Shown in pieces: positions 282 through 62,170 of a stretch of 64,000 nt of DNA (positions are counted from its first letter, which is position 1; every line of letters starts with the position of its first letter). Position numbers and translations under genes: made by a program. Location of the stretch: contig NC_043016.1 of assembly GCF_006345805.1 (NCBI RefSeq), positions 124,001 through 188,000 of the forward strand, written 5' to 3'. A model generated the notes under the pieces. It ran no database searches. It saw nothing but the letters and a program-made list of their open reading frames with translations, and had not been told where the DNA came from. This stretch comes from Octopus sinensis. Its lineage: Eukaryota.

Positions 282-364
282 CGACGGGCTTCTTTTCAGT
301 TTCTGTCTACCAAATCCACTCACATGTGGCTGGTAAGCAAGCTACTTACCACACAGCCACACCT
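21..364 (-). mobile_element. tRNA-derived SINE, family A (internally deleted copy)
   Basis: Reverse complement of the head (GGTGTGGCTGTGTGGTAAG...) and tail (...CCAGCATGGC...GTCAAATGACTGAAACAAGTAAAAGA) seen at 8831, 18481, 53880, 58967; internal (CA)n(TA)n. Confidence 0.85.
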
Positions 365-435
365 AATCATAATAATAAATAACAACAACAACGACGACGA
401 CGACGAAAACAACAACAACAGCAACAACAATTATA

Positions 436-1676
436 ATAATAATAACCTTCCCAGAGCTCAGGGAGGTCGAGGTTTGATCCAGCTTGAACTTACATACAAA
501 ACCACCACAATCGGACTGGCCAAATACCTTGAAGCAACCAAGGATTGGATGCTAAAACTTGTTGAAAAACATGAGAGACTGAAAAGACTTCACTCTATTC
601 TCAAAGAGAGCAAAGAATTCGCTGCTGATCTCCTAGATACCCACCAGATTGATCAGGCTGAAGGAAATGCGCCAACTGCAGCTGCAAAGGAAATAAAATT
701 AATTGCAAAGACAAAAGCACATGAAAATTTAGCTAGCAGATGGGAACAGAAACCTCTCCATGGCAAGTATGTGGCCCGTAGCAAACAAGCTGATGCCAAC
801 CAGACACACACGCACCAATGGTTACAAAGCTCAGGGTTAAAAGCAGAGAGTGAAGGTTTCATATTAGCTGCTCAAGACCAAAGCTTATTAACCCGGAACT
901 ACCAAGCCAATGTGATAAAAAATGGAGCTGACCCAAAATGCCGATTCTGTAACGATGAGATTGAAACATTAGACCACCTAATCTCAGGGTGTAGAGTCTT
1001 AGCACCTTCAGAATATAAAGCAAGCCATGACAGAGTCGGCCAGTATTTACATTGGACAATATGTCGGTATTATAAAATCAAAACCGCTGACAAATGGTAT
1101 AAACACCATCCTGAAGCTGTGACTGAGGGAGAAAATGTGTCGATTCTATGGGACTTCCCCGTGCAGACCGACAAGACTATAAAAGCTAATAAGCCGGATA
1201 CTATTATAAAAGATCAGACAAAAAGGATGTGTTTATTAATTGACATGAGTATTCCCGGTGATCACAATATAGCGGCGAAAGAATTTGACAAGATTAGTAA
1301 ATATAAAGACCTTGCTAATAAAAGTTGAAAAAATGTGGCATCTCAAGGCGACTACAGTACCAGTGATTGTAGGATCTCTAGGAATGATGAAAAAAGGTAT
1401 TGAAACCTATTTGAAAATGATTCCAGGCTTACCATCCCTACAGGAAGTGCAAAAAATCGTATTAACTGGAACGGCTCATGTACTGAGAAGAGCACTATCG
1501 CTGTGAAAATAACATCCATCCATGAATTTATTTATTTATTAATTTTTAAATACATATTTTATCTGTGAATTTGCGCGTGTAATCTGGGAATGCATACAAT
1601 GCCCTTCTCTGCCCTGGGTGTATGGAAAACACTTGGTGAGAAACGGAAGAAAATTTGAAGAAAGAAGGAAAAAACA
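436..1676 (+). mobile_element. 5'-truncated R4/Dong-like non-LTR retrotransposon (CCHC knuckle + restriction-like endonuclease), frameshifted
   Basis: GGRGL, CRFC..ETLDHLISGC, KPDTIIKD..LIDMSIP.D..K..KY, then frameshift near 1310 to VPVIVGSLG..VLTGTAHVLRRALSL* (1506); AAC/AAT repeats at both ends. Confidence 0.88.
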
Positions 1677-3320: not shown

Positions 3321-5806
3321 CATCACAGAGAAAGATTTGCCGGAAATAAAGAAAAGCTGAAGCAAGATATCCTTGCCAAAGCACAAAGGATCCGCCGGTA
3401 CAAGAAACGCCAACGCTTCTTTGAAGAAAACAAAAAGTTCAACTCCAACCCCAAAAGTTCTACCAAGAACTGGGCAAAAATAAAATAGAAGTCACTGCAG
3501 CACCAACGGCAGAAGAATTGGAAGAATTCTGGAGTGAAATATGGTCGGCGACGAACCACCAAAAAAAAGGAGTATCAAAATAACAAACTCGGCATCTGAA
3601 CAACTTTGGACCCCCATAACAACTGAAGAGGTCACCCAGGCACTGCAAAGACTAAGCAAATGGAAGGCACCTGGGCATGATAAGATCCCCAACTTCTGGT
3701 TGAAATATCTAACAGGAATGCCACAAAAAGCTGGCTGAAAACTTTAACAACGTACTAGCAGAGCCAGAGACAATGCCTGAATGGCTCACGAAGGGGAAAA
3801 CCATCTTAATTCCCAAATCAAATGAAACAGAAAAACCAGAAAACTACAGACCAATAACCTGCCTCCTACTATGTTCAAGGCATTTACTGCAGTGATATCG
3901 CAAAGGCTGAACAAGCACCTGGACGAAAACAAACTGTTCCCAGAAGAGCAGAAAGGATGCCGCAAAGGCTCATATGGCTGTAAAGATCAACTAATGATTA
4001 ATAAAGCCGTAACTGAAGACAGCCACAGAAAGAAGAAAGGCCTCAGTATGGCCTGGATTGACTACAAAAAGGCGTTTGATAGCATCCCCCACACATGGAT
4101 CCTCGAAACACTAGCCATTAACAAAGTAGCACCAACAATCATAAAATTCATAGAGCACTCTATGAATAAATGGCAAACAGTCCTACACCTCCAAACAAAT
4201 GAGGGACTCATGAAAACCAATGACATCCCCATTAGAAGAGGAATATTCCAGGGAGACACGCTCTCTCCACTCCTTTTCTGCTTGGCACTGTCACCTCTAT
4301 CTGATATGCTAAATAGAACTGGATGCGGATATATAAATGTTACGGCAAAACGATCAGCACCTTTTATATATGGATGACCTAAAACTATACGCTGCAAATG
4401 ACAAACAGCTGGAAACACCATTAAAGACAGTTCATGGATTTACCAAAGAAATAGATATGAAATTTGGATTAGAAAAATGCGCCAATGTAACCATGAAAAG
4501 GGACAAAACTAGTTAAGAGTAACAACATCACACTAGATAAAACCAATGAAATAAAAGAATTAGACCAAAGCCAAACTTACAAATACTTAGGAATCCATGA
4601 ACTAGATAAGACACAACACACAAAATGAAAGAGAAAATAAAAAAAGAATATTATAGAAGTTAGATCAATACTAAACACAGAGCTCAATGCTAAAAACAAG
4701 ATAATAGGTATCAAGCTGTCCCAGTTATAAGTTACAGCTACAATATCCTTAACTGGACACGAAATGAACTGATCAAAATAGATAGGAAAACAAGAAAAAT
4801 AATGACAGGATCTAGGATGCATCACCCAAAATCTGACATAGAAAGACTATATATACAACGTATAGGCCTTATACAGCTGAAAAACTACTATGAAATAACC
4901 ACCATAGGACTGCAAAAATATCTACTTCAGAAGGAAAGAAAACTGATCCAGATAGCGGCAAAACACGAGCAAAACAAAAAACTGTTCTCAGTATTTAAAG
5001 AAATAGACAAAGAAAAATCCCAGCAATGGTTGAGAAGCTCAGGACTCAAAGCAGAAAGAAACAGGGATTTTTAATTGCAGCACAAGACCAAAGCCTCCCC
5101 ACCAGAAATTACCAAAAACATGTAATGAAAAGAAATATTACAAGTAACTGCAGAATATGTGGAGATGGACAAGAAAAATAAATCATATTATCTCTAGCTG
5201 CCCAGTCCTGGCTAAGAAGGAATATATTCACAGACATGACAGAGTTGGAACCTACATACATTGGAAGCTATGCCAACATTATGGAATAACAACAGAAAAA
5301 AGATGGTATAGGCACACACCAGAAAAGGTCACAGAAAACGAGAAAGCAACCATACTCTGGGATATGCCGATACACACAGATAGAGAAATTAGGCCAACAA
5401 ACCAGATATAGTTATCAGAGATCATGAAGAAAAAAATGCTTTCTAATTGATGTATCAATACCGGCAGATGACAACGTGTCTCTAAAAGAAATGGAGAAAC
5501 TCTCAAAATACAAAGAACTGGAAATAGAGGTAACTAGAATGTGGAATCTGAAACAGAAACAATTCCTATCATAGTAGGTGCATTAGGCATGATAAAAAAA
5601 TATTCAGACAATACATAACAAAAACATCTGGACTTACAAACACATTAACATACAGAAAATTGCACTACTAGGCACTGCACACATCCTACGCAGAACACTT
5701 TCCATACAATAACCATCAGAGCATCACAACAAATCACAGCACATACCCAAGGCACACAGAGCTGCGCTCGGTAGTGAAGTGAAAGCACGCTATAAAAATA
5801 AAACTA

Positions 5807-11618: not shown

Positions 11619-12225
11619 GGCGGCGAGCTGGCAGAAACGTTAGCACGCCGGGCGAAACACCTAGCGGTATTTCTTCTGCCGCTACGTTCTGAGTTCAAAT
11701 TCCTCCGAGGTCGACTTTGTGGTATATCCTTTCGGGGTCGATTGAATAAGTACCAGTTACGCACTGGGGTCGATATAATCGACTTAATTCGTTTGTCTGT
11801 CCTTATTTGTCCTCTCTGTGTTTATCCTCTTGTGGGTAATAAAGAAATAGCTATTTCGTCTGTCGCTACGTTCTGAGTTCAAATTCCCCTGAGGTCGACT
11901 TTGCCTTTCATCCTTTCGGGGTCGATTAAATAAGTACCAGTTACGCACTGGGGTTGATATAGTCGACTTAATCCGTTTGTCTGTCCTTGTTTGTCCCCTC
12001 TGTGTGTAACCCCTTCTGGGTAATAAATAAATAGGTATTTCGTCTGCTGTTACGTTCTGAGTTCAAATTCCACCGAGGTCGACTTTGCCTTCCATCCTTT
12101 CGGGGTCGATTAAATAATTACCAGTTACGCACTTAATCGACTATAATCGACTTAATCCGTTTGTCTGTCCTTGTTTGTCCCCTCTGTGTGTAGCCCCTTG
12201 TGGGAAGTAAAGAAATAAGAAATAA
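11619..12225 (+). mobile_element. SINE family B multimer (one head + three ~186-bp bodies)
   Basis: Body restarts at TATTTCGTCTG after each GAAATAG end (~11851, ~12036). Confidence 0.85.
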
Positions 12226-15963: not shown

Positions 15964-16572
15964 TATTTCTTTACTACCCACAAGGAAGGACAAACAAGGA
16001 CAGACAAACAGATTAAGTCGATTATATCGACCCCAGTGCGTGACTGGTACTTATTCTATCGACCCCGAAAGGATGAAAGGCAAAGTTGACCTCGGTGAAA
16101 TTTGAATTCAGAACGTAACGGCAGACGAAATACCTATTTCTTTACTACCCACAATGGGTGAAACAGAGAGAGGAAAAACAAGGACAGACAAACGGATTAA
16201 GTCGATCATATCGACCCCAGTGCGTAACTGGTACTTAATTTATCGACCCCGAAAGGATGAAAGGCAAAGTTGACCTCGGTGAAATTTGAATTCAGAACGT
16301 AACGGCAGACGAAATACCTATTTCTTTACTACCCACAATGGGTGAAACAGAGAGAGGAAAAACAAGGACAGACAAACGGATTAAGTCGATCATATCGACC
16401 CCAGTGCGTAACTGGTACTTAATTTATCGACCCCGAAAGGATGAAAGGCAAAGTTGACCTCGGTGAAATTTGAATTCAGAACGTAACGGCAGACGAAATA
16501 CCTATCCCTTTACTACCCACAGACGAAATACCGCTAAGCATTTCGCCTGGCGTGCTGACGCCTCTGCCAGCT
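15964..16572 (-). mobile_element. SINE family B multimer with 19-bp TSD
   Basis: Bodies of 171, 184 and 184 bp plus head; AGCAAGTTGTCCATACACC at 15945-15963 and 16573-16591. Confidence 0.9.
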
Positions 16573-17214: not shown

Positions 17215-17460
17215 ATATATAAGTTATATTTTGTGAAATTTGATTTAGTATTTCTAAATGGAATTTTTCCCTGTAAGTTAGGAATAATATTCCCTCAAAT
17301 AATTATTATATATATATACATATTATATTAAATTAGAGATAAAACCACTATTAGGCAAATCAAACAGTGAAAAACATAAGCCAATACATAAAATTAATTT
17401 AAAAATATAAAAGTTAAAAATTAAAAATTTATTTAAATAATTTAAACTTATAAATTTTAA
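17215..17460. repeat. AT-rich interspersed repeat fragments, possibly Penelope-like
   Basis: Shares GAGA(T/C)AAAACCACTATT with 20475-20780 and 33590-33880, and GAATTTTTCCCTGTAAG with 20740; next to (TA)n. Confidence 0.5.
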
Positions 17461-20474: not shown

Positions 20475-20780
20475 ATAAAATATGAATTAGAGATAAAACC
20501 ACTATTATGCAACTCAAACTTATTATATTATATTTATCTTTCATTTTATACTTTTTGGAAAAATATATAAATAAATAAATATAAAATTGATATATATATA
20601 TATAATATATATACTACTTTTATTTGTTATTTATGTATTGGTTTATGTCTATCACGGTTTATGTTGCATAATAGTGGTTTTATCTCCAATTCATATTTTA
20701 TAAATTTATACTGTGAAATTTGATTTAATACTAAATTGAATTTTTCCCTGTAAGTTTTAGTTATACTTCCTAATATTATA
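20475..20780. repeat. Inverted pair of Penelope-like AT-rich fragments
   Basis: 39-bp inverted repeat, 20475-20513 / 20663-20701, one mismatch. Confidence 0.55.
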
Positions 20781-33484: not shown

Positions 33485-33584
33485 NNNNNNNNNNNNNNNN
33501 NNNNNNNNNNNNNNNNNNNNNNNNNNNNNNNNNNNNNNNNNNNNNNNNNNNNNNNNNNNNNNNNNNNNNNNNNNNNNNNNNNNN
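33485..33584. other. Assembly gap (100 N)
   Basis: Run of N. Confidence 1.
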
Positions 33585-33739: not shown

Positions 33740-33782
33740 CCACCTGAAGATTGTCGATCAAGACAAGAAACAATTGTAGTGG
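33740..33782 (+). ncRNA. Minimal type I hammerhead ribozyme motif (Penelope-type)
   Basis: CCAC-CTGAAGA-TTGTC gatcaa GACAA-GAAA-CAATTG-TA-GTGG: helix I 4 bp, helix II 5 bp, palindromic helix III ACAATTGT, GUA cleavage triplet. Confidence 0.75.
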
Positions 33783-37188: not shown

Positions 37189-40100
37189 TGTTTCTTTATT
37201 AGCCACACAGGGCTGCACACAGACAGGACAAATTACAAGGTAGAGCTTTTCTTTTGGGAGTAAAAAAGGGGGTTTGGTTTTCGATCAAAAGGGATCGTAA
37301 AAGGAAAGAAAGAGGACAAAAAAAGGGGGGATAAAATAAAAAATTAAAAATTAAAAAAGGGGGGGAAGGGAAAGGAAAAAATTGATCAATAGGGATCGTT
37401 ATCACAGAAATGTCAATATGAAGTGTAAAGGGGAGGACAGGTGAGGTTTACCCATGGAAAGAAATGCCTACGGAAAAGACCACGGTAACCTCGGTCAATG
37501 AAGTCACATGTTATATTTCTTTTTTTTTTTGCAAATAAGCAACTCTCTGTATTAATTTTTACGGTTCATAGAATCATAGTCAAGGTGGCTTCGTCATTCA
37601 TACGTGCCATCCTTGCTACATTCACCCATCTTTTTTAAAACATTCACTAGACAAAACTTGCCTCTCTACTCTCACTTTCCTCTTCAAGTGATACTTGAAG
37701 AAGTTGATGAGAGATTGACCAGAGAGGAAAGTGTTTGTCTCTAATCCTTTCAGGCGCGTCAACCAGATACATTCTTTCGCCATAGCCACAAGTATGATAA
37801 AAATAGCTCTTCCTTTCCGTTTGAAGGAAGGAGGCGTGACGATATTAACGATAGACTCAGCTGATAAACCGACACGTCCCACACGTGACAGCAGTCGTTC
37901 GACATAAGCCCACAGGTCGGAGATTGTTGGACACTGCACGATTGCGTGCAGAGCGGTTTCGTCGCTCTGCCCGCATCTCGGGCAGGTCGGCCCCGTGTTT
38001 CTCGAGCCATGCCTATAGAGTTTATCCCGAACGGGTAGCGCTTCTCGGTAGCACCGCCAGGCCAGGGATCTCTGGAAGTTGCCCATAGGTCCCGGCCCGA
38101 AAGTCGTCCTGAACAGGCGGGTCAGGTATTCCTCGTCGACGCCCAGGTTTGCCCCAAGATCGTCGTCGTACCTCGCCTCCACGAATCCCCTATAGAATGC
38201 TTTGGTTGTGTTGAAGTCACTCGATGTCGACCCGGGACGGCAGAGTTGCTTGAGAGCAACGCGACACTCGCTGTGCCATTCGCTCTTCCTCGGCCTCTTT
38301 TTGATCCACGACTGCAGTTCGGTCATGGAGACGAGCTGCGGGAACGCGTGCCTCACAAACGGCGACCACACCTGTTCACCGTCGTCTACATAGAGCCGGA
38401 GATGTCGCAGTCTCAGCGCGTGTCTGCGCATCATCAACCATGGCATACTCAGCCCTCCTTTTAACGGGTGTTGACAGCAAATGGATCGCCTGACCATCGG
38501 GACGCATCCTTTCCACAAGAAGCGGAAGAGAATGCGTTCTAGTTTGGTGATGGTAGGGTCGGGACAAGGTACGACGGTCAGGCGGTAGTAGATGATGGAC
38601 GCGATGTACGTGTTCGCCACCTCCGCCCGACCTTTTAGGGACAGTTTCCTCTCGGCCCATTGCTGGGCAAGAGTGACCACCCTACTCGTTATCTCGTTCC
38701 AGTTCTTCTCCATTTGGAGGTCCGGACCGAACCAGACCCCGAGCAACTCGACCGGGCCGTCTGTCCAGCGTCCCACGACGGAAGTACTGGTGGACGGCAT
38801 GGGCTTGCTTCTCCAGGTGCCGAGCCGCAAGCCCACTGACTTTTCCCGGTTGATTTTTGCTCCTGTCACCGCTTCGTAGTCTTTCAGTGTCTCACCGACC
38901 AGCTCGATGTGCTCGTGGCTTGACACTATGATGGTGACGTCGTCCGCGTATGCAGACACGCTCGTCCCGCATCCCAATTCTCGCGGGATGCCCCGCAGAG
39001 TCGCCAGCTTCCGCAGTAGTGGCTCAAGAGTCAATACGTATAGAAGCGCCGAGAGGGGGCATCCCTGACGGACCGAACGTGCAATGTCGAAAGGTCTCGA
39101 TTGAGGTCCATTTACGCGAATTACCGAACGGATGCCTCTGTACAAGGCAGCTATCCAGCCGCGGAAGACGGGACCGAAACCAGCCGCTCTCAGGACTGCC
39201 TCCAAGTATCGATGGTCTACCCTATCGAAGGCTTTCGATTGATCCAAGTTGATCAGGGCCCCACCCATGCCAGGTTCCTTAACTACTCTGTCTATGATGT
39301 AGCGCATCAGATGGAGGTTGTCATGGATGCTCCGGCCCGGCACGGCGCACGTTTATGCGTTGTCGACCAGTTTCTCGATGACAAGCGCCAACCTCTTGGC
39401 TAACACCTTTGTCAAAATTTTCAGGTCTGCATTGAGCAGAGTGATTGGTCTAAAGTTATCTATAATGTTCCCCTTGTTTGGGTCTTTCTTCAGCAGCGTT
39501 ACGGCTCCTCGACTCACAAAACCGGGTATGCTCCCGTTTTGCTGCCAGTTGCAGTATACCGCTGCCAAGACGTCTCCAAACAAGTCTGGCATACAATTGT
39601 AAAACTCGTAGGGCAGACCATCCAAACCCGGCGATTTGTCTCTCGAGCATTCTGCCATCGCGTCCCGCACATCCGCCGCCGTGATGGCACCTTCGCAGCA
39701 CCCTGCCTCTCTTGCCGAGAGTCGTGGTAGGCTGTGCAGGTAGGCACTGAAGTCCACTCTGCGTTCACGCTCACCACTCGTCCCGTACAGTCGGGCAAAG
39801 TGCCGCTGAAATGTCTCGCACATCTTGCTGGGCTCGAGCAATTCGCGCCCTTGTTCATCTACCAGAGACCGAATGGTGGCTTTGTTGCCCTGCTGTGCCT
39901 CCGCCACCCGGCCTCCCTCGCGGCTCCAACACCTTCCATCCTTAGAGCACGCATCCTAGCCCTGACAGCACACCCTTCGTGTTTGGCGTTGAAGTGTTGG
40001 TCAAGGGCCAACCTCGCCGCTAACACGTCGGATGTGATGCCGCTTCTTATTGCCTCTTCTAACTTCTTAACTAACTCACCCTCTACTCTATTTCTATCTA

Positions 40101-41750
40101 CGGCTAGTGTCTTGCTGTATCTAATTGCTTCCGCTTTCACTGCTCTCTTGAGGGCGAACCACCATTTGTTGTTGACAATGGCTCCCGTTAAAGCCCTTTT
40201 TACTAACGTGTTGATTCTGTCTCTGAAAACTTGTCTGGACGGGAATGATGCGTTCAGTTTCCAGTAACCAGGGCCCTTATCTAAGTCTAGCGTACACGTC
40301 ACGAATTTGTGATCCGTGTAGCTGACAGTGTGGAATTGTGGACATCCTAAGCTATCCCTGTCTACTGTCCTACACAGTATCCTATCTAGATACGATCTCG
40401 ACGACCCACTGCGGTTGCTCCATGTCCACGTTGGTGCATTTGGGTGGTCGAGTCGGTACCTGTCAGACAGTTGGAATCGTCTGAGCAGGTCTCTGGGGCA
40501 TTTGCATCCCCTTCTGTTTTTGTCTCTCCCCACATAGTCTAGATGCGTGTCCAAGGTAGCATTCCAATACCCCACTAAAAGTAAAGGACGAGACGTTCCC
40601 AGGAATACTTCTAGACGTCGAAAGAAATCCGGCCGACCTGTTAAAGGCGGTGCGTAGACTGATACGAGTCGAAAAGCGCACCCATTGCTGCCGTCGACAT
40701 CCAGAACGACCAGCTGCCCTCCGGGTCTACGAATATCATCTTGACTTCGAGATCCAGGCTCTTGTGAAAAAGTACCGGGGTGCTACTACCGCCCATCCTC
40801 GACAGACGGAGCAAAATAAATGTTAAACTGTCCGCCAAACATGGACTTTAGGGCCCGTGGATCGTGGAGTCTGGTCTCACTTATGGCTATGATTCCCAAA
40901 TCGTGTGACTTGATGTCATTTAGGAGGTATCCTTGTTTCCAAGGAGACCCCAAGCCACGCGCATTCACACAACCAATCTTGACCATGATTCTATTGGGGT
41001 GTGTGCTTTAAAACACAAAAAGGAAAGTACAGAGAGTTACTTACTTGTGTCGAAAGTTTTGGCTTCCTCGTTCTTTGATGTGTCTTGGAGGAGGTTTTTA
41101 TAGAGTTTTTGTGACAAGTATTTTTGGAACGCCCCAACAGCATTTGGAAAGAGGGCTTTGAGTGTGTGGTGTTCTGTCTGTGTGATGTGTAGTATTTTGA
41201 TGTGTTTGGGTGGTGTAGTGCGTGGATGGTTGTTAGTTTTGAAGTCATCTTCACAGATGTTTGTGTGGGCTGTGATGTACTCCATTAGTTTGGAGTCTTT
41301 GGTGTCTATCGCTGATAGCATTGTGTGTGTTTTTGTGGTGTTGGTACTTGTTTGGTTGTGAATGGAGCTTTCAGGGTTCAGTTATCTCCCTGCTTTGGTT
41401 GCGTTTTCTTGTTTGTTTTCTTTTTATCTTTTTCTTTTATCCCCGGTGGCTATTTGCCATTCTGTCGAACTTTCATCGTTAGATGAAAAGTCTGACGAAT
41501 CAGCAGGGGGCAAGGGTAAAGCATCTGGGTCTGTTTGTGCGGTTGTAGATATTGTTGTGGTGTGCGGGGGGTGGTGCTGGGGGGTTTGTTGTGGTTATTG
41601 TCTCTCCTACATCCTTGGAGCTTGTCTTCTTCGTTGTTGTTCTCGGTGTTGGAATTGGTTTAGTTGTCGTTGGTGGTGATGATTCTGTTCTTGGCGCAGG
41701 TGGTGGTGTTGTTTGGTTGGGTTGGTCCGTTCTTTGTTGCTTTTCATGCA
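37189..41750 (-). mobile_element. Tx1/L1-clade non-LTR retrotransposon, 5'-truncated, ORF2 nearly complete
   Basis: ORF2 40986 to ~37566: APE (VNARGL, SET, YLDRI, YTDH), RT (SPGLDG, RPITLLNAD, LDQSKAFDRV, QGCPLS, YADD), C-terminal CPRC..ETALHAIVQC; ~3 frameshifts and a nonsense codon at 39353; ORF1-like remnant 41037-41750; 3' UTR ends AATAAAGAAACA. Confidence 0.95.
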
Positions 41751-42609: not shown

Positions 42610-43790
42610 GTGTTAGCTGGTTGCTTCTTTGGTGTGCTACTTGGCTGTTGTGTTACTTGGCTGGTGTATTGCTTGGCTGTTGTGTTGCTTGGTTGTTGTG
42701 TTGCTTGGTTGTTTTATTGCTTGGTTGTTGTGTTGCTTGGTTGTTTTGTTGCTTGGTTGTTGTGTTGCTTGGTTGTTTTGTTGCTTGGTTGTTGTGTTAT
42801 TTGGCTGGTGTATTGCTAGGCTGTTGTGTTGCTTGGCTGGTGTGGTGATTTGCTGTTGTGTTGCTTGGTTGTTGTGTTGCTTGGCTGTTGTGTTGCTTGG
42901 ATGGTGTGTTGCTTGGTTGTTGTGTTGCTTGGCTGTTGTATTGCTTGGTTGTTTTGTTATTTGGCTGGTGTATTGCTAGGCTGTTGTGTTGCTTGGCTGG
43001 TGTGGTGATTTGCTGTTGTGTTGCTTGGTTGTTGTGTTGTTTGGCTGTTGTGTTGCTTGGATGGTGTGTTGCTTGGTTGTTGTGTTGCTTGGCTGTTGTA
43101 TTGCTTGGTTGTTTTGTTGCTTGGTTGTTGTGTTATTTGGCTGGTGTATTGCTAGGCTGTTGTGTTGCTTGGCTGGTGTGGTGATTTGCTGTTGTGTTGC
43201 TTGGTTGTTGTGTTGCTTGGCTGTTGTGTTGCTTGGATGGTGTGTTGCTTGGTTTTTGTGTTGCTTGGCTGTTGTGTGCTTGGCTGTTGTATTGCTTGGT
43301 TGTTTTGTATTTGGCTGGTGTATTGCTAGGCTGTTGTGTTGCTTGGCTGGTGTGGTGATTTGCTGTTGTGTTGCTTGGTTGTTGTGTTGTTTGGCTGTTG
43401 TGTTGCTTGGATGGTGTGTTGCTTGGTTGTTGTGTTGCTTGGCTGTTGTATTGCTTGGTTGTTTTGTTGCTTGGTTGTTGTGTTATTTGGCTGGTGTATT
43501 GCTAGGCTGTTGTGTTGCTTGGCTGGTGTGGTGATTTGCTGTTGTGTTGCTTGGTTGTTGTGTTGCTTGGCTGTTGTATTGCTTGGTTGTTGTATTGCTT
43601 GGTTGTTATGTTGCTTGGCTGCTGTGTTGCTTGGGTGTTGTGTTGCTTGGTTGTTGTGTTGCTTGGGTGTTGTGTTGCTTGGTTGTTGCGATGCTTAGCT
43701 GTTGTGTTGCTTGGCTGTTTTGTTGCTTGGCTGGTGTGTTGCTTGGCTGTTGTGTTGTTTGGCTGGTGTGTTGCTTGGTTGTTGTGTTGC
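42610..43790. repeat. 16-bp GT-rich minisatellite (GG(C/T)TGTTGTGTTGCTT) with 160-176-bp higher-order period
   Basis: Variant block TTGGCTGGTGTATTGCTAGG recurs at 42801, 42961, 43137, 43311, 43487. Confidence 0.92.
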
Positions 43791-43876
43791 TTCGCAATTG
43801 CAACGACATGACTGCACAGTTTTAGGATAACATTGTAGGTCAGATAGTGAAAGGTCTGATCTGGCCAGATTGAATA

Positions 43877-55259: not shown

Positions 55260-56330
55260 CAGTTATATGAAACTGTTGGAGACTAAAATCAAACCCTAGC
55301 TGGAAAAGGTTGCTGCTTGAAAGCCATATGTATGGCAGCAGGATTGGACTCTTTGCCATCCCTCCAGAAAGTGTCAAGTGGTTTTAGGAGAATTTCTATG
55401 ACTTCACCTGCCCCAATTTCTGGTCTCCTAATTCCCCAAATTTTAATCCTATTAATTACAATGTGTGAGCGGCAGCTGGGAAAGATACCAACTGTTCTGC
55501 CTGCAACACTATGGCCGGGCTAGGCTGGGCTGGGCTGAGCTGAGCTGGGCTGGGCTGAGCTGGGCTGGGCTAGGCTGGGCTGGGCTGGGCTGAGCTGAGC
55601 TGGGCTGAGCTGGGCTGGGCTGGGCTGAGCTGGGCTGGGTTGAACTGAGCTGGGCTGAGCTGAGCTGAGCTGGGCTGAGCTGGGCTGGGCTGGGCTGAGC
55701 TGGGCTGGGCTGAGCTGAGCTGGGCTGAGCTGAGCTGGGCTGGGCTGAGCTGAGCTGGGCTGAGCTGGGCTGGGCTGGTCTGAGCTGGGCTGGGCTGGGC
55801 TGGGCTGGGCTGGGCTGGGCTGAGCTGAGCTGGGCTGAGCTGAGCTGAGCTGGGCTGAGCTGAGCTGGGCTGAGCTGAGCTGGGCTGAGCTGGGCTGGGC
55901 TGGGCTGGGCTGAGCTGGGCTGGGCTGAGCTGAGCTGGGCTGAGCTGAGCTGGGCTGAGCTGGGCTGGGCTGGGCTGAGCTGAGCTGGGCTGAGCTGGGC
56001 TGGCTGGGCTGGGCTGGGCTGGGCTGGCTGGCTGAGCTGAGCTGGGCTGAGCTGGGCTGAGCTGGGCTGGGCTGGGATGGGCTGGGATGGGCTGGGCTGG
56101 GCTGGTGGCCAAGATCATAGAGGTGTTCAAAGATCTTCTCAGTGACACAGTGAGGAATGCATGCACCAGGTTCCAGAGCCATCTTGAGGCTGTGGTGGAA
56201 ACTGAGGGCAGCTACTCTGAGTAAACTATTATTTCCCAACCATAATCTAGTTGGTATTTTTTGATTTTTTACGATACTTTTATTTTTGGATGGGATATTG
56301 TTTTCTTTTCCTTTTATGCAAAGTGTCAAA
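55260..56330 (+). mobile_element. Tc1/mariner-superfamily (maT/DD37D-like) transposase remnant, split by pentamer array
   Basis: PYVWQQD..FWSPNSPNFNPINYNV*..NTMA [array] LVAKIIEVF..RNACTRFQSHLEAVVETEGSYSE* (56224). Confidence 0.8.
55517..56103 (+). repeat. (GAGCT/GGGCT)n pentamer array
   Basis: 587 bp, ~117 pentamers. Confidence 0.97.
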
Positions 56331-59411: not shown

Positions 59412-60042
59412 TATATATGCATAAATATACACATGCACACACACACACACATATACCCCCCCCCCCTAAATTAGATGGATAAAGTAAGTACCAGGCTGAA
59501 GGAAACAAAAGGTACTGGCTTGATTCATTTGATTAAAACCCTTCAAGGTGGTGCATCAGCATGGTCCATAGACAACGGTTGAGACAGGTAAAAGAGAAAG
59601 GTAAAAATAAGTATAGCACATTTTGAGATTGAACCTGTGGTGTCCTGCTTGCAAAGGACACATGCAAAAATATGCACACACATACATGTAAACACACTTG
59701 CACACACACATACCATCCATAGACACACACACACACAAATATACCCCACCCCACCCACACAAATCTGATATATATATATATGTATATAAGTTTAACAATT
59801 AAGGATAATCTCTTAATAAGGATCTTAACAAGAAATTATCAGGTAGCTAGCGTGAAAACCTCATAAAAGAAAAGAATCCGAAAATAATTTTTTCTTCGAA
59901 CAAATTAATTATATCTATATTGTTATAGAGGGGCAATTATTACAATAAATGCCACACTAGGAGGGACAGAGTCATTACTACCAAAATTATACTAATCATA
60001 CCCAAATGCAGTTTTTCAAAGCAAGACATTAAAATGAATTAT

Positions 60043-60096
60043 GTTCTGTATCACCGTGATTTCACATACAACTTGCGTCTAATGATCGTCAGCAGA
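60043..60096 (-). ncRNA. Type I hammerhead motif, unit 1 (2-nt loss in helix I)
   Basis: Core as in unit 2; 5' strand of helix I shortened. Confidence 0.6.
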
Positions 60097-60505
60097 TGAT
60101 TCTGAATACATCATAAATAAACTAACCTTACGGCGAAGACGAACAGACAAGCTCTCTCCGGCCAAGCACATGGAATGTTATAAATCATACTACCGGTAAA
60201 TGGCGGGCTTTTTACGAACTGCATGTCGGGTAATGAAAAGTATTTCGGAATAAGTTTAACAATTAAGGAAATCTCTTAATAAGGGATCTTAACAAGAAAT
60301 TATCAGGTAGCTAGCGTGAAAACCTCATAAAAGAAAAGAATCCGAAAATAATTTTTTCTTCTGAACAAATTAATTATTCTATATTGTATAGAGGGCATTA
60401 TTACATAAATGCCTCACACTAGGAGGGACAGAGTCATTACTACCAAAATTATACTAATCATACCCAAATGCAGTTTTTCAAGCAAGACATTTAAAAATGA
60501 ATTAT

Positions 60506-60561
60506 GTTCTGTATCACCGTGATTTCACATACAACTTGCGTCTAATGATCGTCAGCAGAAC
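60506..60561 (-). ncRNA. Type I hammerhead motif, unit 2 (intact)
   Basis: Minus: GTTCTG-CTGACGA-TCATTAGAC GCAA GTTGTATGT-GAAA-TCACGGTGA-TA-CAGAAC; 6-bp helix I, GNRA-capped helix II, near-palindromic helix III, AUA triplet. Confidence 0.78.
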
Positions 60562-60975
60562 TGATTCTGAATACATCATAAATAAACTAACCTTACGTAG
60601 CGAAGACGAACAGACAACTGCTCTCTCCGGCCAAGCACATGGAATGTTTATAAATCATATATCCGGTAATGGCGGGCTTTTTACGAACTGCATGTCGGGT
60701 AATGAAAGTATTTCGGAATAAGTTTAACAATTAAGGATAATCTCTTAATAAGGATCTAACAAGAAATTATCAGGTAGCTAGCGTGAAAACCTCATAAAAG
60801 AAAAGAATCCGAAAATAATTTTTTTCTCTGAACAAATTAATTATATCTATATTGTATAGAGGGCATTATTAACATAAATGCCTCACACTAGGAGGGACAG
60901 AGTCATTACTACCAAAATTATACTAATCAACCCAAATGCAGTTTTTCAAAGCAAGACATTTAAATGATGAATTAT

Positions 60976-61029
60976 GTCTGCTCACCGTGATTTCACATAC
61001 AACTTGCGTCTAATGATCGTCAGCAGAAC
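60976..61029 (-). ncRNA. Type I hammerhead motif, unit 3 (cleavage site altered)
   Basis: Core and helix II intact; plus strand GTCTGCTCACC instead of GTTCTGTATCACC. Confidence 0.5.
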
Positions 61030-61439
61030 TGATTCTGAATACATCATAAATAAACTAACCTTACGTAGCGAAGACGAACAGACAACTGCTCTCTCCGGCC
61101 AAGCACATGGAATGTTATAAATCATATATCCGGAAATGGCGGGCTTTTTACGAACTGCATGTCGGGTATGAAAAGTATTCGGAATAAGTTTAACAATTAA
61201 GGATAATCTCTTAATAAGGGATCTTAACAGAAATTATCAGGTAGCTAGCGTGAAAACCTCATAAAAGAAAAGAATCCGAAAAATTTTTTCTTCTGAACAA
61301 ATTAATTATATCTATATGTATAGAGGCATTATTACACATAAATGCCTCACACTAGGAGGGACAGAGTCATTACTACCAAAATTATACTAATCATACCCAA
61401 ATGCAGTTTTTCAAAGCAAGACATTTAAAAATGAATTAT

Positions 61440-61495
61440 GTTCTGTATCACCGTGATTTCACATACAACTTGCGTCTAATGATCGTCAGCAGAAC
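61440..61495 (-). ncRNA. Type I hammerhead motif, unit 4 (intact)
   Basis: Same 56-nt motif as unit 2. Confidence 0.78.
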
Positions 61496-61864
61496 TGATT
61501 CTGAATACATCATAAATAAACTAACCTACGTAGCGAAGACGAACAGACACTGCTCTCTCCGCCAAGCACATGGAATGTTTATAAATCATATATCCGGTAA
61601 ATGGCGGGCTTTTTGATGAACCGAACTGCATGTCGGGTAATGAAAAGTTATTTCGGAATAAGTTTAACAATTAAGGATAATCTCTTAATAAGGGATCTTA
61701 ACAAGAAATTATCAGGTAGCTAGCGTGAAAACTCCAAAGAAAAGAATCCGAAAATATTTTTTTCTTCTGAACAAATTAATTATATCTATATTGTATAGAG
61801 GGCATTATTACACATAAATATATTATATATTACACATTATTACACATAAATATATGTATATATA

Positions 61865-62170
61865 TATTTCGTTTTGGATTTGGTTTGCAAATTCTTTATA
61901 TGAGTTCATGTGTTGAAGCATATTCTGTTGTGTCTGGGGAGAGCCATTTTCTTTTGTGCCTTATAATGGAACACATCACCGGTAAAATTTCCACTTATTC
62001 CTTATTTTTATTTCCTAAAACTCTCTAGAGTCAAGACTATTGAAAAGGTTGTAAGATGCAATGAAAATTTTAGGAAAATAAAAATAAGGAATAAGTGGAA
62101 ATTTTACCGGTGGCTGTTACATTATAAGGCACAAAAAGAAATGACTGACTCTCCAGACACAACAGAGTAG
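61865..62170. repeat. Two inverted copies of the 48262 repeat (foldback, ~100-bp arms)
   Basis: Arms 61925-62021 and 62065-62166 are reverse complements with a few mismatches. Confidence 0.8.

What the first reader, a model, noticed from the sequence alone, without database searches (positions are those of the whole stretch)
59787..61820. Hammerhead-ribozyme tandem array: candidate retrozyme (circular-RNA retroelement) in a cephalopod-like genome
Seen: ~4.3 head-to-tail units of 464-474 bp with no credible ORF. Each full unit carries a minus-strand type I hammerhead: GTTCTG/CAGAAC helix I, CUGACGA core, GCAA-capped helix II, GAAA, near-palindromic helix III (ATCACGGTGAT) and an AUA site. Units 2 and 4 are intact, with predicted cuts at 60512/60511 and 61446/61445. 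Established: metazoan non-LTR retrozymes are tandem repeats with one type I hammerhead per monomer whose transcripts self-cleave to unit length and circularise; Penelope pseudo-LTRs carry similar minimal hammerheads that work as dimers. Inference: this locus could yield ~467-nt linear or circular RNAs, mobilised by an autonomous RT. Caveats: U.U at 10.1/11.1, a 1-nt helix III loop (implies dimer activity), a monomer longer than I recall for most animal retrozymes, and unit differences that look like long-read indel errors.
Basis: partly seen in the sequence, partly recalled or inferred. Interest (0 to 1): 0.92.

Follow-up and report, generated by a model that had tools for sequence, protein, structure and literature searches.

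The report
Hammerhead-ribozyme tandem repeat in an octopod genome
A 2-kb non-coding tandem repeat in a cephalopod genome carries a hammerhead self-cleaving-RNA motif in each unit and fits the known "retrozyme" class of small circular-RNA retroelements, but cleavage, circles and mobility are untested.

Summary
A 4.3-copy tandem array of about 468 bp lies at 59786-61819. It has no credible ORF and 34% GC. Each full unit carries a minus-strand type I hammerhead (HHR) motif, intact in units 2 and 4. The predicted cuts at 60512/60511 and 61446/61445 are correct.

The motif is far beyond chance, with about 0.0002 expected per 64-kb window. It meets the field's core criteria (CUGANGA / GAAAY / RUH). 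Its near-palindromic helix III resembles those of validated coral, mussel and axolotl retrozyme HHRs. Its U.U at the base of helix II matches axolotl HHR_Amex2. Two copies co-fold into a double hammerhead. As a circle, the HHR strand of the consensus monomer folds far better than shuffles (z -5.2; other strand z -2.1).

Against it: no Rfam hammerhead match even at E<=10. A model built from four validated retrozyme HHRs gives only 9.3 bits. Helix II is imperfect. No other copies could be found, and there are no expression data.

Verdict: a probable non-LTR retrozyme, a new member of a known kind in a cephalopod, with function unproven. Unit length and copy number are within published ranges. 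A second, solo HHR-like motif lies at 33740-33782.

The parts
59786..61819 (-). Tandem array of 4.3 units of about 468 bp. It is non-coding with 34% GC. The minus strand is the proposed RNA strand.
   Evidence: TRF; unit alignment; consensus and GC content; ORF list.
60506..60561 (-). Intact type I hammerhead motif of unit 2. It has helix I GUUCUG/CAGAAC, core CUGACGA...GAA, a GCAA-capped helix II and helix III AUCACGGUGAU. The predicted cut lies between 60512 and 60511.
   Evidence: Sequence; descriptor hit; full-length alignment to model R1 at 9.3 bits.
61440..61495 (-). Intact type I hammerhead motif of unit 4. The predicted cut lies between 61446 and 61445.
60043..60096 (-). Hammerhead motif of unit 1 with helix I shortened to 4 bp. 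Two bases (AC) are missing from its 5' strand. Core, helix II and helix III are intact. The would-be cut lies between 60049 and 60048.
   Evidence: Unit alignment; passes the relaxed descriptor with a 4-bp helix I.
60976..61029 (-). Degenerate hammerhead motif of unit 3. The core and helix II are kept. The cleavage-site triplet, the 3' arm of helix III and the 3' strand of helix I are altered (GTTCTGTATCACC becomes GTCTGCTCACC on the + strand).
61820..61849 (.). 30-nt extension after the truncated last unit. It is a diverged re-copy of the last roughly 32 nt of that unit (ATATTATATATTACACATTATTACACATAAAT). It may be an insertion 'tail' or the product of a microhomology jump.
   Evidence: TRF row 61787-61860, period 32, 2.3 copies; flank print-out. 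PLE 'tails' of 30-40 bp are described. The link to them is inference only.
59776..59788 (.). Left copy of the 13-nt direct repeat ATATATGTATATA that flanks the array. It is a candidate target-site duplication but is low-complexity.
   Evidence: The 13-mer occurs 9 times in the window counting both strands.
61850..61862 (.). Right copy of the 13-nt direct repeat ATATATGTATATA.

Best explanation
The array is a metazoan non-LTR retrozyme-type element in a cephalopod, probably octopod, genome. It is a non-coding tandem repeat of about 468 bp whose minus-strand transcript carries one type I hammerhead per unit.

**Shown:** the repeat, the complete catalytic core, the three helices, the dimer-compatible helix III and the strand-specific foldability.

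**Inferred mechanism:**
1. A multimeric minus-strand transcript forms.
2. Two neighbouring hammerheads pair through their near-palindromic helix III (AUCACGGUGAU, 10 bp with a central G.G). This makes a double hammerhead that cuts after A17, at the AUA^C site.
3. Cleavage releases unit-length RNA of about 467 nt. From the assembly as written, with unit 3 broken, the product would be 934 nt. The ends would be 5'-OH and 2',3'-cyclic phosphate.
4. A host tRNA-type ligase circularises this RNA.
5. A reverse transcriptase supplied in trans copies the circle more than once round, and the multimeric cDNA integrates. Published work points to Penelope-like elements as the source of that enzyme.

The array ends do not fall at the cleavage site. 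That fits a circular template, or later DNA-level duplication, and not an end-to-end copy of a cleaved linear monomer.
For: 1. The motif satisfies the field's criteria CUGANGA / GAAAY / RUH (criteria quoted; sequence). All invariant core positions and a 6-bp helix I are present.
2. The chance expectation is 0.0002 per window. The motif occurs once per unit of a tandem repeat.
3. Helix III is near-palindromic. The four experimentally validated retrozyme HHRs have palindromic helix III: coral ACAGUACUGU, mussel ACGCGCGU, and axolotl ACACGUGU and ACAUGU. Axolotl HHR_Amex2 also has the U.U at the base of helix II and A17, and it works as a dimer.
4. Two 56-nt motifs co-fold into the double hammerhead at -29.3 kcal/mol, against 2 x -9.1 kcal/mol for the monomers. 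The helix III duplex alone contributes -11.9 kcal/mol, whereas the monomer hairpin gives 0.
5. The consensus monomer folded as a circle gives -121.8 kcal/mol on the HHR strand, with z -5.24, 0 of 150 shuffles as stable and 68% of bases paired. Helix I and the helix II hairpin are present in that fold. The other strand gives z -2.13. The raw unit gives z -2.81 against -1.49.
6. Class features are met: 34% GC, no ORF, no LTR, and unit length and copy number within published ranges.
7. A second, unrelated HHR-like motif with a perfect palindromic helix III lies in the same window. Two independent loci were found where 0.0009 is expected. This suggests the genome really harbours such ribozyme motifs.
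Against: - No Rfam hammerhead model matches, at gathering score or at E<=10 in 2.4 kb or in 86 nt.
- My covariance model, built from four validated retrozyme HHRs, aligns the motifs full-length but at only 9.3 bits and E 2.7. Eight unrelated sites score higher.
- Positions 10.1/11.1 form U.U instead of the highly conserved G-C. Helix II is 3 bp, a 2x2 internal loop, then 3 bp.
- The isolated motif is no more stable than shuffles (z +0.67).
- Two of the four motifs are damaged as assembled.
- The window holds only one locus, and no relatives were retrievable. There is therefore no covariation and no proof of mobility.
- No PLE genes lie near the array.
- The candidate target-site duplication is low-complexity.
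- There are no RNA data.
Confidence: 0.62

Rival explanations
1. The array is an ordinary local satellite, amplified by unequal crossing-over or replication slippage. Its unit happens to contain a hammerhead-like string. No ribozyme or RNA function is involved.
For: - Covariance models do not support the motif.
- Helix II is imperfect and has a U.U closing position.
- The isolated motif is not unusually stable.
- There is a single locus with no relatives.
- The region is full of tandem repeats.
- In a genome of a few Gb, the strict descriptor would still give a handful of chance hits. This follows from 0.0002 per 64 kb.
Against: - A chance hit falling inside a tandem repeat of the right unit size is much rarer than a chance hit anywhere.
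- The same strand shows strong extra foldability outside the motif (z -5.24 against -2.13).
- The palindromic helix III and the GNRA-capped helix II were not required by the core pattern, yet they match validated retrozyme HHRs.
- A second HHR-like motif lies in the same window.
Confidence: 0.2
2. The array is a fragment of an autonomous Penelope-like element, not an independent non-autonomous element. It would be a multimerised pseudo-LTR or terminal non-coding region carrying the PLE's minimal, dimer-acting hammerhead.
For: - The long helix II, the lack of recognisable loop-loop contacts and the palindromic helix III resemble PLE minimal hammerheads.
- A 30-nt terminal extension and a microsatellite insertion site are PLE-like traits.
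- A 2026 preprint derives animal retrozymes from PLE pseudo-LTRs.
Against: - No RT or GIY-YIG ORF adjoins the array in the 9 kb upstream or the 2.2 kb downstream that the window holds.
- The window's RTs are LINE-type, with RVT_1 and zf-RVT domains and relatives carrying an AP endonuclease. They lie at least 20 kb away.
- A PLE pseudo-LTR arises from partial tandems of a 3-4 kb element, not from 4.3 units of 468 bp.
- The G10.1-C11.1 pair typical of PLE minimal hammerheads is absent.
- The PLEs reported in cephalopods are Naiads, which lack hammerheads.
Confidence: 0.1
3. The element is a decayed retrozyme. The array descends from a real hammerhead-bearing retroelement but is now a dead relic: not transcribed or no longer cleaving, because of the U.U closing position, the helix II mismatches and two broken units.
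For: - Two of the four motifs are damaged.
- The motif shows non-canonical features.
- Model scores are weak.
- Animal PLE and retrozyme HHRs of this dimeric kind show low activity in vitro.
Against: - Units are 95-99% identical to the consensus with almost no substitutions (8 substitutions against 44 gap events). The array is therefore young, or the damage is assembly error.
- The consensus folds better than the raw unit, as expected if the indels are noise.
Confidence: 0.08

Closest known systems
Metazoan non-LTR retrozymes (Cervera & De la Pena 2020, PMC7229834), for example Mytilus galloprovincialis repeats of 350-390 bp
   Same: - Both are non-coding, low-GC tandem repeats with one type I hammerhead per monomer.
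- Helix III is palindromic.
- The RNA is predicted to be highly self-paired.
- There are no LTR, PBS or PPT features.
- The host phylum is Mollusca.
   Different: - The unit of about 468 bp is longer than the 150-450 bp first described, though it lies within the 51-972 bp reported later.
- Helix II is 8-9 positions long with an internal loop, not 4 bp.
- Positions 10.1/11.1 form U.U.
- Helix III has 5-bp arms and one central G.
- No sequence similarity was sought or found.
- Expression, circles and copy number are unknown here.
Axolotl retrozyme Rtz_353 / HHR_Amex2
   Same: - U.U mismatch at the base of helix II.
- A at position 17.
- Palindromic helix III containing CACGUG (ACACGUGU there, AUCACGGUGAU here).
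- Expected to depend on a dimeric (double-hammerhead) conformation.
   Different: - It is a vertebrate element with a 353-bp unit and a 4-position helix II with a 5-nt loop.
- It retains loop-loop contacts.
- It is experimentally shown to cleave and to circularise.
Minimal hammerheads of Penelope-like element pseudo-LTRs (Cervera & De la Pena 2014, PMC4209133)
   Same: - Long helix II.
- Extra nucleotide after A9.
- Palindromic 15.x/16.x positions.
- No obvious tertiary contacts.
- Presumed dimer action and low expected activity.
   Different: - Those have helix I of 4-5 bp, a conserved G10.1-C11.1 pair and little or no helix III.
- They sit in the terminal repeats of a 3-4 kb element that encodes RT and GIY-YIG.
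- None of these genes is present next to this array.
Newt satellite 2 and Schistosoma Sm-alpha hammerhead repeats
   Same: Both are genomic tandem or SINE-like repeats of a few hundred bp that carry type I hammerheads. The newt motif needs a double-hammerhead conformation.
   Different: Different hosts and sequences. Those motifs are recognised as canonical, with loop-loop contacts. This one is not matched by Rfam models.

Membership tests
Hammerhead ribozyme, type I | Conserved catalytic core: C3 U4 G5 A6 N7 G8 A9, G12 A13 A14, A15.1-U16.1 and H17, in the order helix I - core - helix II - GAA - helix III - H - helix I. | tested here: met
   CUGACGA ... GAA A...U A^C is found in u1, u2 and u4. 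It also meets the GAAAY and RUH criteria (15.2 = U, 16.2 = A) quoted.
Hammerhead ribozyme, type I | Helix I is open-ended and base-paired next to the core and the cleavage site. | tested here: met
   GUUCUG/CAGAAC forms six Watson-Crick pairs in u2 and u4. The helix is formed in the local and in the circular minimum-energy folds.
Hammerhead ribozyme, type I | Helix II is closed by the conserved G10.1-C11.1 pair. | tested here: not met
   Positions 10.1/11.1 are U.U. The stem is 3 bp, a 2x2 internal loop, 3 bp and a GCAA loop, with a fold energy of -3.5 kcal/mol. There is a precedent for U.U in an active dimeric HHR, axolotl HHR_Amex2.
Hammerhead ribozyme, type I | Helix III is formed, either as a monomer hairpin or as an extended helix in a double hammerhead. 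| tested here: met
   The monomer hairpin is not stable (0 kcal/mol). The intermolecular duplex gives -11.9 kcal/mol, and the co-fold of two motifs gives the double hammerhead at -29.3 kcal/mol.
Hammerhead ribozyme, type I | Recognised by curated covariance models (the Rfam hammerhead families). | tested here: not met
   No hammerhead match at gathering score or at E<=10.
Hammerhead ribozyme, type I | Similarity to experimentally validated retrozyme hammerheads under a covariance model. | tested here: inconclusive
   Model R1 was built from four sequences (coral, mussel and two axolotl). It aligns both intact motifs end to end at exactly the predicted coordinates, but at 9.3 bits and E 2.7, ranked 9th-10th in the window. 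The model expects a 4-bp helix II.
Hammerhead ribozyme, type I | Site-specific self-cleavage. | not testable with these tools
   This needs in vitro transcription of monomer and dimer constructs.
Hammerhead ribozyme, type I | Covariation in helices across related copies. | not testable with these tools
   Only four near-identical units are available (8 substitutions in total). No relatives were found in any reachable collection.
Metazoan non-LTR retrozyme | Head-to-tail tandem repeats of a short non-coding monomer, from dimers to multimers, with one type I HHR each. | tested here: met
   4.3 units of 464-474 bp. Published ranges are 150-450 bp and 51-972 bp, with at most 7 units in 75% of families.
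Metazoan non-LTR retrozyme | Low GC content (<45-50%), with no ORF, LTR, PBS or PPT. | tested here: met
   GC is 34%. The longest ORF is 74 aa and has no homologues. No terminal repeats other than the units themselves were seen. PBS and PPT were not searched for separately.
Metazoan non-LTR retrozyme | The monomer RNA is predicted to be stable and highly self-paired. | tested here: met
   The circular fold of the consensus HHR strand has z -5.24 and 68% of bases paired.
Metazoan non-LTR retrozyme | Multiple dispersed genomic loci, with target-site duplications where visible. | tested here: inconclusive
   The 64-kb window holds one locus. A 13-nt flanking direct repeat exists but is TA-rich low complexity. 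No eukaryotic genome collection is available.
Metazoan non-LTR retrozyme | Expressed as linear and circular unit-length RNAs. | not testable with these tools
   No RNA data are available.
Metazoan non-LTR retrozyme | Co-occurrence with hammerhead-bearing Penelope-like elements in the same genome. | tested here: inconclusive
   No PLE genes were found in the window. The literature reports Naiad PLEs in cephalopods, and these lack HHRs. A solo min-HHR-like motif at 33740-33782 hints at other HHR-bearing elements.
Penelope-like element pseudo-LTR | The repeat flanks, or is a partial tandem of, an ORF encoding RT plus a GIY-YIG endonuclease. | tested here: not met
   Flanking ORFs of 94-163 aa at 50.4-54.2 kb, 57.3-59.5 kb and 62.5-62.8 kb gave no RT or GIY-YIG match. 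The window's RTs are LINE-type and lie at least 20 kb away. Only 2.2 kb downstream is visible.

The most novel reading that the evidence does not exclude
This would be the first retrozyme family described in cephalopods. Its hammerhead variant would be an obligate dimer with three unusual features: a long, interrupted, GNRA-capped helix II, a U.U at 10.1/11.1, and an 11-nt near-palindromic helix III. It would be actively transcribed in octopus tissues and processed into abundant circular RNAs of about 467 nt. Together with solo HHR motifs such as the one at 33740-33782, it would mark an undescribed hammerhead-bearing retroelement system in a lineage where only hammerhead-less Naiad PLEs have been reported.
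Probability: 0.3. Interest if true: 0.55.

Novelty: new member of a known kind. Interest (0 to 1): 0.38.

Why it matters
If real, it extends ribozyme-dependent circular-RNA retroelements to cephalopods. These genomes are known for heavy repeat content and unusual RNA biology. It would provide a natural hammerhead with a non-canonical helix II closing position and a long dimerisation helix, useful for understanding how far the motif tolerates change. It would also raise the question of which autonomous element mobilises it, because the Penelope-like elements reported in cephalopods lack hammerheads. It does not open a new category. Retrozymes are already documented in cnidarians, molluscs, arthropods, amphibians, fishes and others.

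Tried and rejected
1. **Rfam.** I ran gathering and permissive searches on the whole window, on 2.4 kb and on 86 nt. There was no hammerhead or other ribozyme family. The weak snoRNA and miRNA hits are chance.
2. **Exact and degenerate DNA scans.** I scanned metagenome and viral contigs for the hammerhead. There were zero hits. These collections hold no animal genomes, so this says little.
3. **Relatives through spurious ORF calls.** The 93-aa open frame of the consensus gave no hit in the word-indexed protein search. The window's 74-aa ORF gave one hit against 1.84 billion representatives, at E 5e-4. That hit is the translation of an unrelated 74-bp satellite with no hammerhead, so I rejected it.
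4. **Source record look-up.** A look-up through the LINE RT found nothing on record. A homology search places the window in a cephalopod: the best named hit is Argonauta hians at 64%, and Acanthosepion pharaonis also appears.
5. **Linked PLE genes.** None were found.
6. **Other copies of the unit in the window.** None were found.
7. **Covariance model from four validated retrozyme hammerheads.** It did not separate the array motifs from background. It did reveal the solo motif at 33742.
8. **First shuffle script.** It timed out and was replaced by Markov simulation.
9. **tRNA scan.** It found nothing. Bacterial promoter and terminator scans were not run, because they do not apply to an animal genome.
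Full report
**1. Observation**

Tandem Repeats Finder reports an array at 59786-61819 with period 468, 4.3 copies, 94% matches and 4% indels. Anchoring on a conserved 17-mer gives five units: 59788-60251 (464 bp), 60252-60719 (468 bp), 60720-61185 (466 bp), 61186-61659 (474 bp) and a 160-bp partial unit at 61660-61819. The consensus is about 470 nt with 34% GC.

The longest ORF in the array is 74 aa. Neither the longest open frame of the consensus nor that ORF has any relative in the large protein collections. The one weak hit, at E 5e-4, is the translation of an unrelated 74-bp satellite without a hammerhead.

On the minus strand each full unit contains 5'-GUUCUG CUGACGA U CAU UA GAC GCAA GUU GU AUG U GAA AUCACGGUGAU A^CAGAAC-3'.
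- The motif is intact at 60506-60561 and 61440-61495.
- Unit 1 lacks two bases of the 5' strand of helix I.
- Unit 3 is altered at the 3' arm of helix III, the cleavage-site triplet and the 3' strand of helix I.
- The predicted cuts at 60512/60511 and 61446/61445 are correct.

**2. More than chance?**

I wrote a descriptor with three parts: a 6-bp helix I abutting CUGANGA, GAAA 8-40 nt later, and U-H within 16 nt followed by the helix I partner. It matches only the two intact motifs in the 64-kb window.

In 632 Mb of first-order Markov sequence with the window's composition, the expected counts per window on both strands are:

| Descriptor | Expected per 64 kb |
|---|---|
| Core plus 6-bp helix I | 0.045 |
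| Plus fully self-complementary helix III | 0.001 |
| Plus helix II hairpin of at most -2 kcal/mol | 0.0002 |

Over a genome of a few Gb, that still allows a handful of chance hits. A chance hit inside a tandem repeat of the right unit size is much rarer.

With helix I relaxed to 4 bp the expectation is 0.0009 per window. The window then contains two independent loci: the array, and a solo motif at 33740-33782.

**3. Does it look like known retrozyme hammerheads?**

The supplementary constructs of Cervera & De la Pena 2020 give four validated motifs. All have a palindromic helix III string running from A15.1 to U16.1:

| Source | Helix III string |
|---|---|
| Coral Amil224 | ACAGUACUGU |
| Mussel Mg353 | ACGCGCGU |
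| Axolotl Ax353 | ACACGUGU |
| Axolotl Ax330 | ACAUGU |

The octopod string AUCACGGUGAU is of the same kind, with one extra central G. Ax353 (HHR_Amex2) also has a U.U at the base of helix II and an A at position 17. The paper shows it cleaves weakly as a monomer and much better as a dimer. The motif also meets the criteria those authors apply, CUGANGA / GAAAY / RUH.

Helix II is 8-9 positions long, carries an extra U after A9 and shows no obvious loop-loop contacts. In this it resembles the minimal hammerheads of Penelope-like elements (PLEs). Those, however, keep G10.1-C11.1, which this motif does not.

**4. Thermodynamics**

- The isolated motif is no more stable than shuffles (z +0.67), and helix III cannot form as a hairpin.
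- Two 56-nt motifs co-fold into the double hammerhead at -29.3 kcal/mol, against -18.2 kcal/mol for two monomers. The helix III duplex contributes -11.9 kcal/mol.
- The consensus monomer folded as a circle gives -121.8 kcal/mol on the hammerhead strand. That is z -5.24, with 0 of 150 dinucleotide shuffles as stable and 68% of bases paired. Helix I and the helix II hairpin are present in the fold.
- The complementary strand gives z -2.13.
- The raw unit as assembled gives z -2.81 against -1.49.

The strand asymmetry lies mostly outside the 56-nt motif. It is therefore partly independent evidence that the minus strand is the functional RNA. Retrozyme circles are described as highly self-paired.

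**5. Evidence against**

- No Rfam hammerhead family matches. This holds at gathering score, at E<=10 in 2.4 kb and in 86 nt. I could not calibrate how well those models detect validated retrozyme or PLE variants.
- A covariance model built from the four validated motifs aligns the two intact motifs end to end at the predicted coordinates. The score is only 9.3 bits (E 2.7), and eight unrelated sites rank higher. The model expects a 4-bp helix II, so the 22-nt helix II is penalised.
- There is no covariation to examine. The units differ by only 8 substitutions against 44 gap events.
- The window holds no other copy, and no relative is retrievable from the available collections.
- There are no RNA data.

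**6. Context**

The window is cephalopod. Its LINE-type RT has RVT_1 and zf-RVT domains, and its relatives carry an AP endonuclease. The RT is 64% identical to an Argonauta hians protein and also matches Acanthosepion pharaonis.

No RT or GIY-YIG coding capacity adjoins the array. It is therefore not a pseudo-LTR of a visible PLE.

The array sits in microsatellite-rich DNA. It is flanked by a 13-nt direct repeat, ATATATGTATATA, at 59776 and 61850. This is a possible target-site duplication, but the repeat is low-complexity and occurs 9 times in the window.

The last, truncated unit is followed by a 30-nt diverged re-copy of its own end. This recalls PLE insertion 'tails', but the link is inference only.

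The array ends do not coincide with the cleavage site. That argues against an end-to-end copy of a cleaved linear monomer. It is compatible with rolling reverse transcription of a circle, or with later DNA-level duplication.

**7. Comparison and novelty**

[quoted passage not shown] Recent work extends consensus lengths to 51-972 bp, finds at most 7 units in most families, and derives them from PLE pseudo-LTRs.

The sequence-level defining features are met here. The functional ones are untestable with these tools. The full-text library returned no paper describing hammerheads or retrozymes in cephalopods, and only Naiad PLEs, which lack hammerheads, are mentioned for them.

The locus is therefore best filed as a probable new member of a known kind, with a somewhat unusual hammerhead variant.

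**8. Verdict**

The anatomy fits a dimer-acting retrozyme, but cleavage, circles and mobility are unproven, and covariance models do not back the motif.
- Confidence that this is a retrozyme-type element with a genuine hammerhead by descent is about 0.6.
- Interest is moderate to low (0.38).

Noticed in passing
window 33740-33782 (+): A second, solo hammerhead-like motif: CCAC|CUGAAGA|UUGUC-GAUCAA-GACAA|GAA|ACAAUUGU|A^GUGG. It has a full core, a 5-bp helix II, an 8-nt perfectly palindromic helix III and only a 4-bp helix I, which makes it look like a PLE-type minimal hammerhead. It is the top hit in the window for my model built from validated retrozyme HHRs (15.9 bits, E 0.026). Rfam does not match it. 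It lies in a 142-nt unique segment between TA-rich microsatellites, 150 nt after an assembly gap. The 3' 70 nt of that segment is a dispersed repeat end that recurs at 17325-17395 (-), 20621-20699 (+) and 20477-20519 (-) without the hammerhead part.
   Followed up: partly
window 61921-62020 and 62067-62169: An inverted repeat with arms of about 100 nt, roughly 90% complementary, and a spacer of about 45 nt. It lies 100 nt downstream of the array and looks like a foldback or MITE-like element.
   Followed up: partly
window 11668-12217 and 15987-16521: Two tandem arrays of about 3 copies of a 184-bp unit, in opposite orientation to each other and 3.8 kb apart. The unit contains a tRNA-like or SINE-like stretch (GTTCAAATTCCACCGAGGTCGAC). 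ARAGORN finds no tRNA there. Both arrays show 0% indels, unlike the hammerhead array.
   Followed up: no
window 59788-61819: The units differ from the consensus by 44 gap events but only 8 substitutions. Either long-read errors were left unpolished in this repeat, or the repeat is unusually prone to indels. The apparent damage to the hammerheads of units 1 and 3 may therefore be an artefact.
   Followed up: partly
window 37622-40575 (-), 324-1328 (+), 3871-4377 (+): Fragments of LINE-type reverse transcriptase genes with RVT_1 and zf-RVT domains. The largest is split into three frames. The best named relative is from Argonauta hians at 64% identity.
   Followed up: partly
window 33485-33584: A 100-base run of N, an assembly gap.
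   Followed up: no
window 42640-43792 and 55513-56105: Two large minisatellites: a 16-bp unit repeated 72 times (CTTGGCTGTTGTGTTG) and a 5-bp unit (GGCTG) repeated 119 times. The second produces a spurious keratin-like ORF.
   Followed up: no
L001 3128-5992: The only protein-level 'relative' of the array ORF is a 1004-aa gene call in an ENA metagenome contig. It is the translation of 38.7 copies of a 74-bp satellite. Its Pfam hits are artefacts of the repeats.
   Followed up: yes
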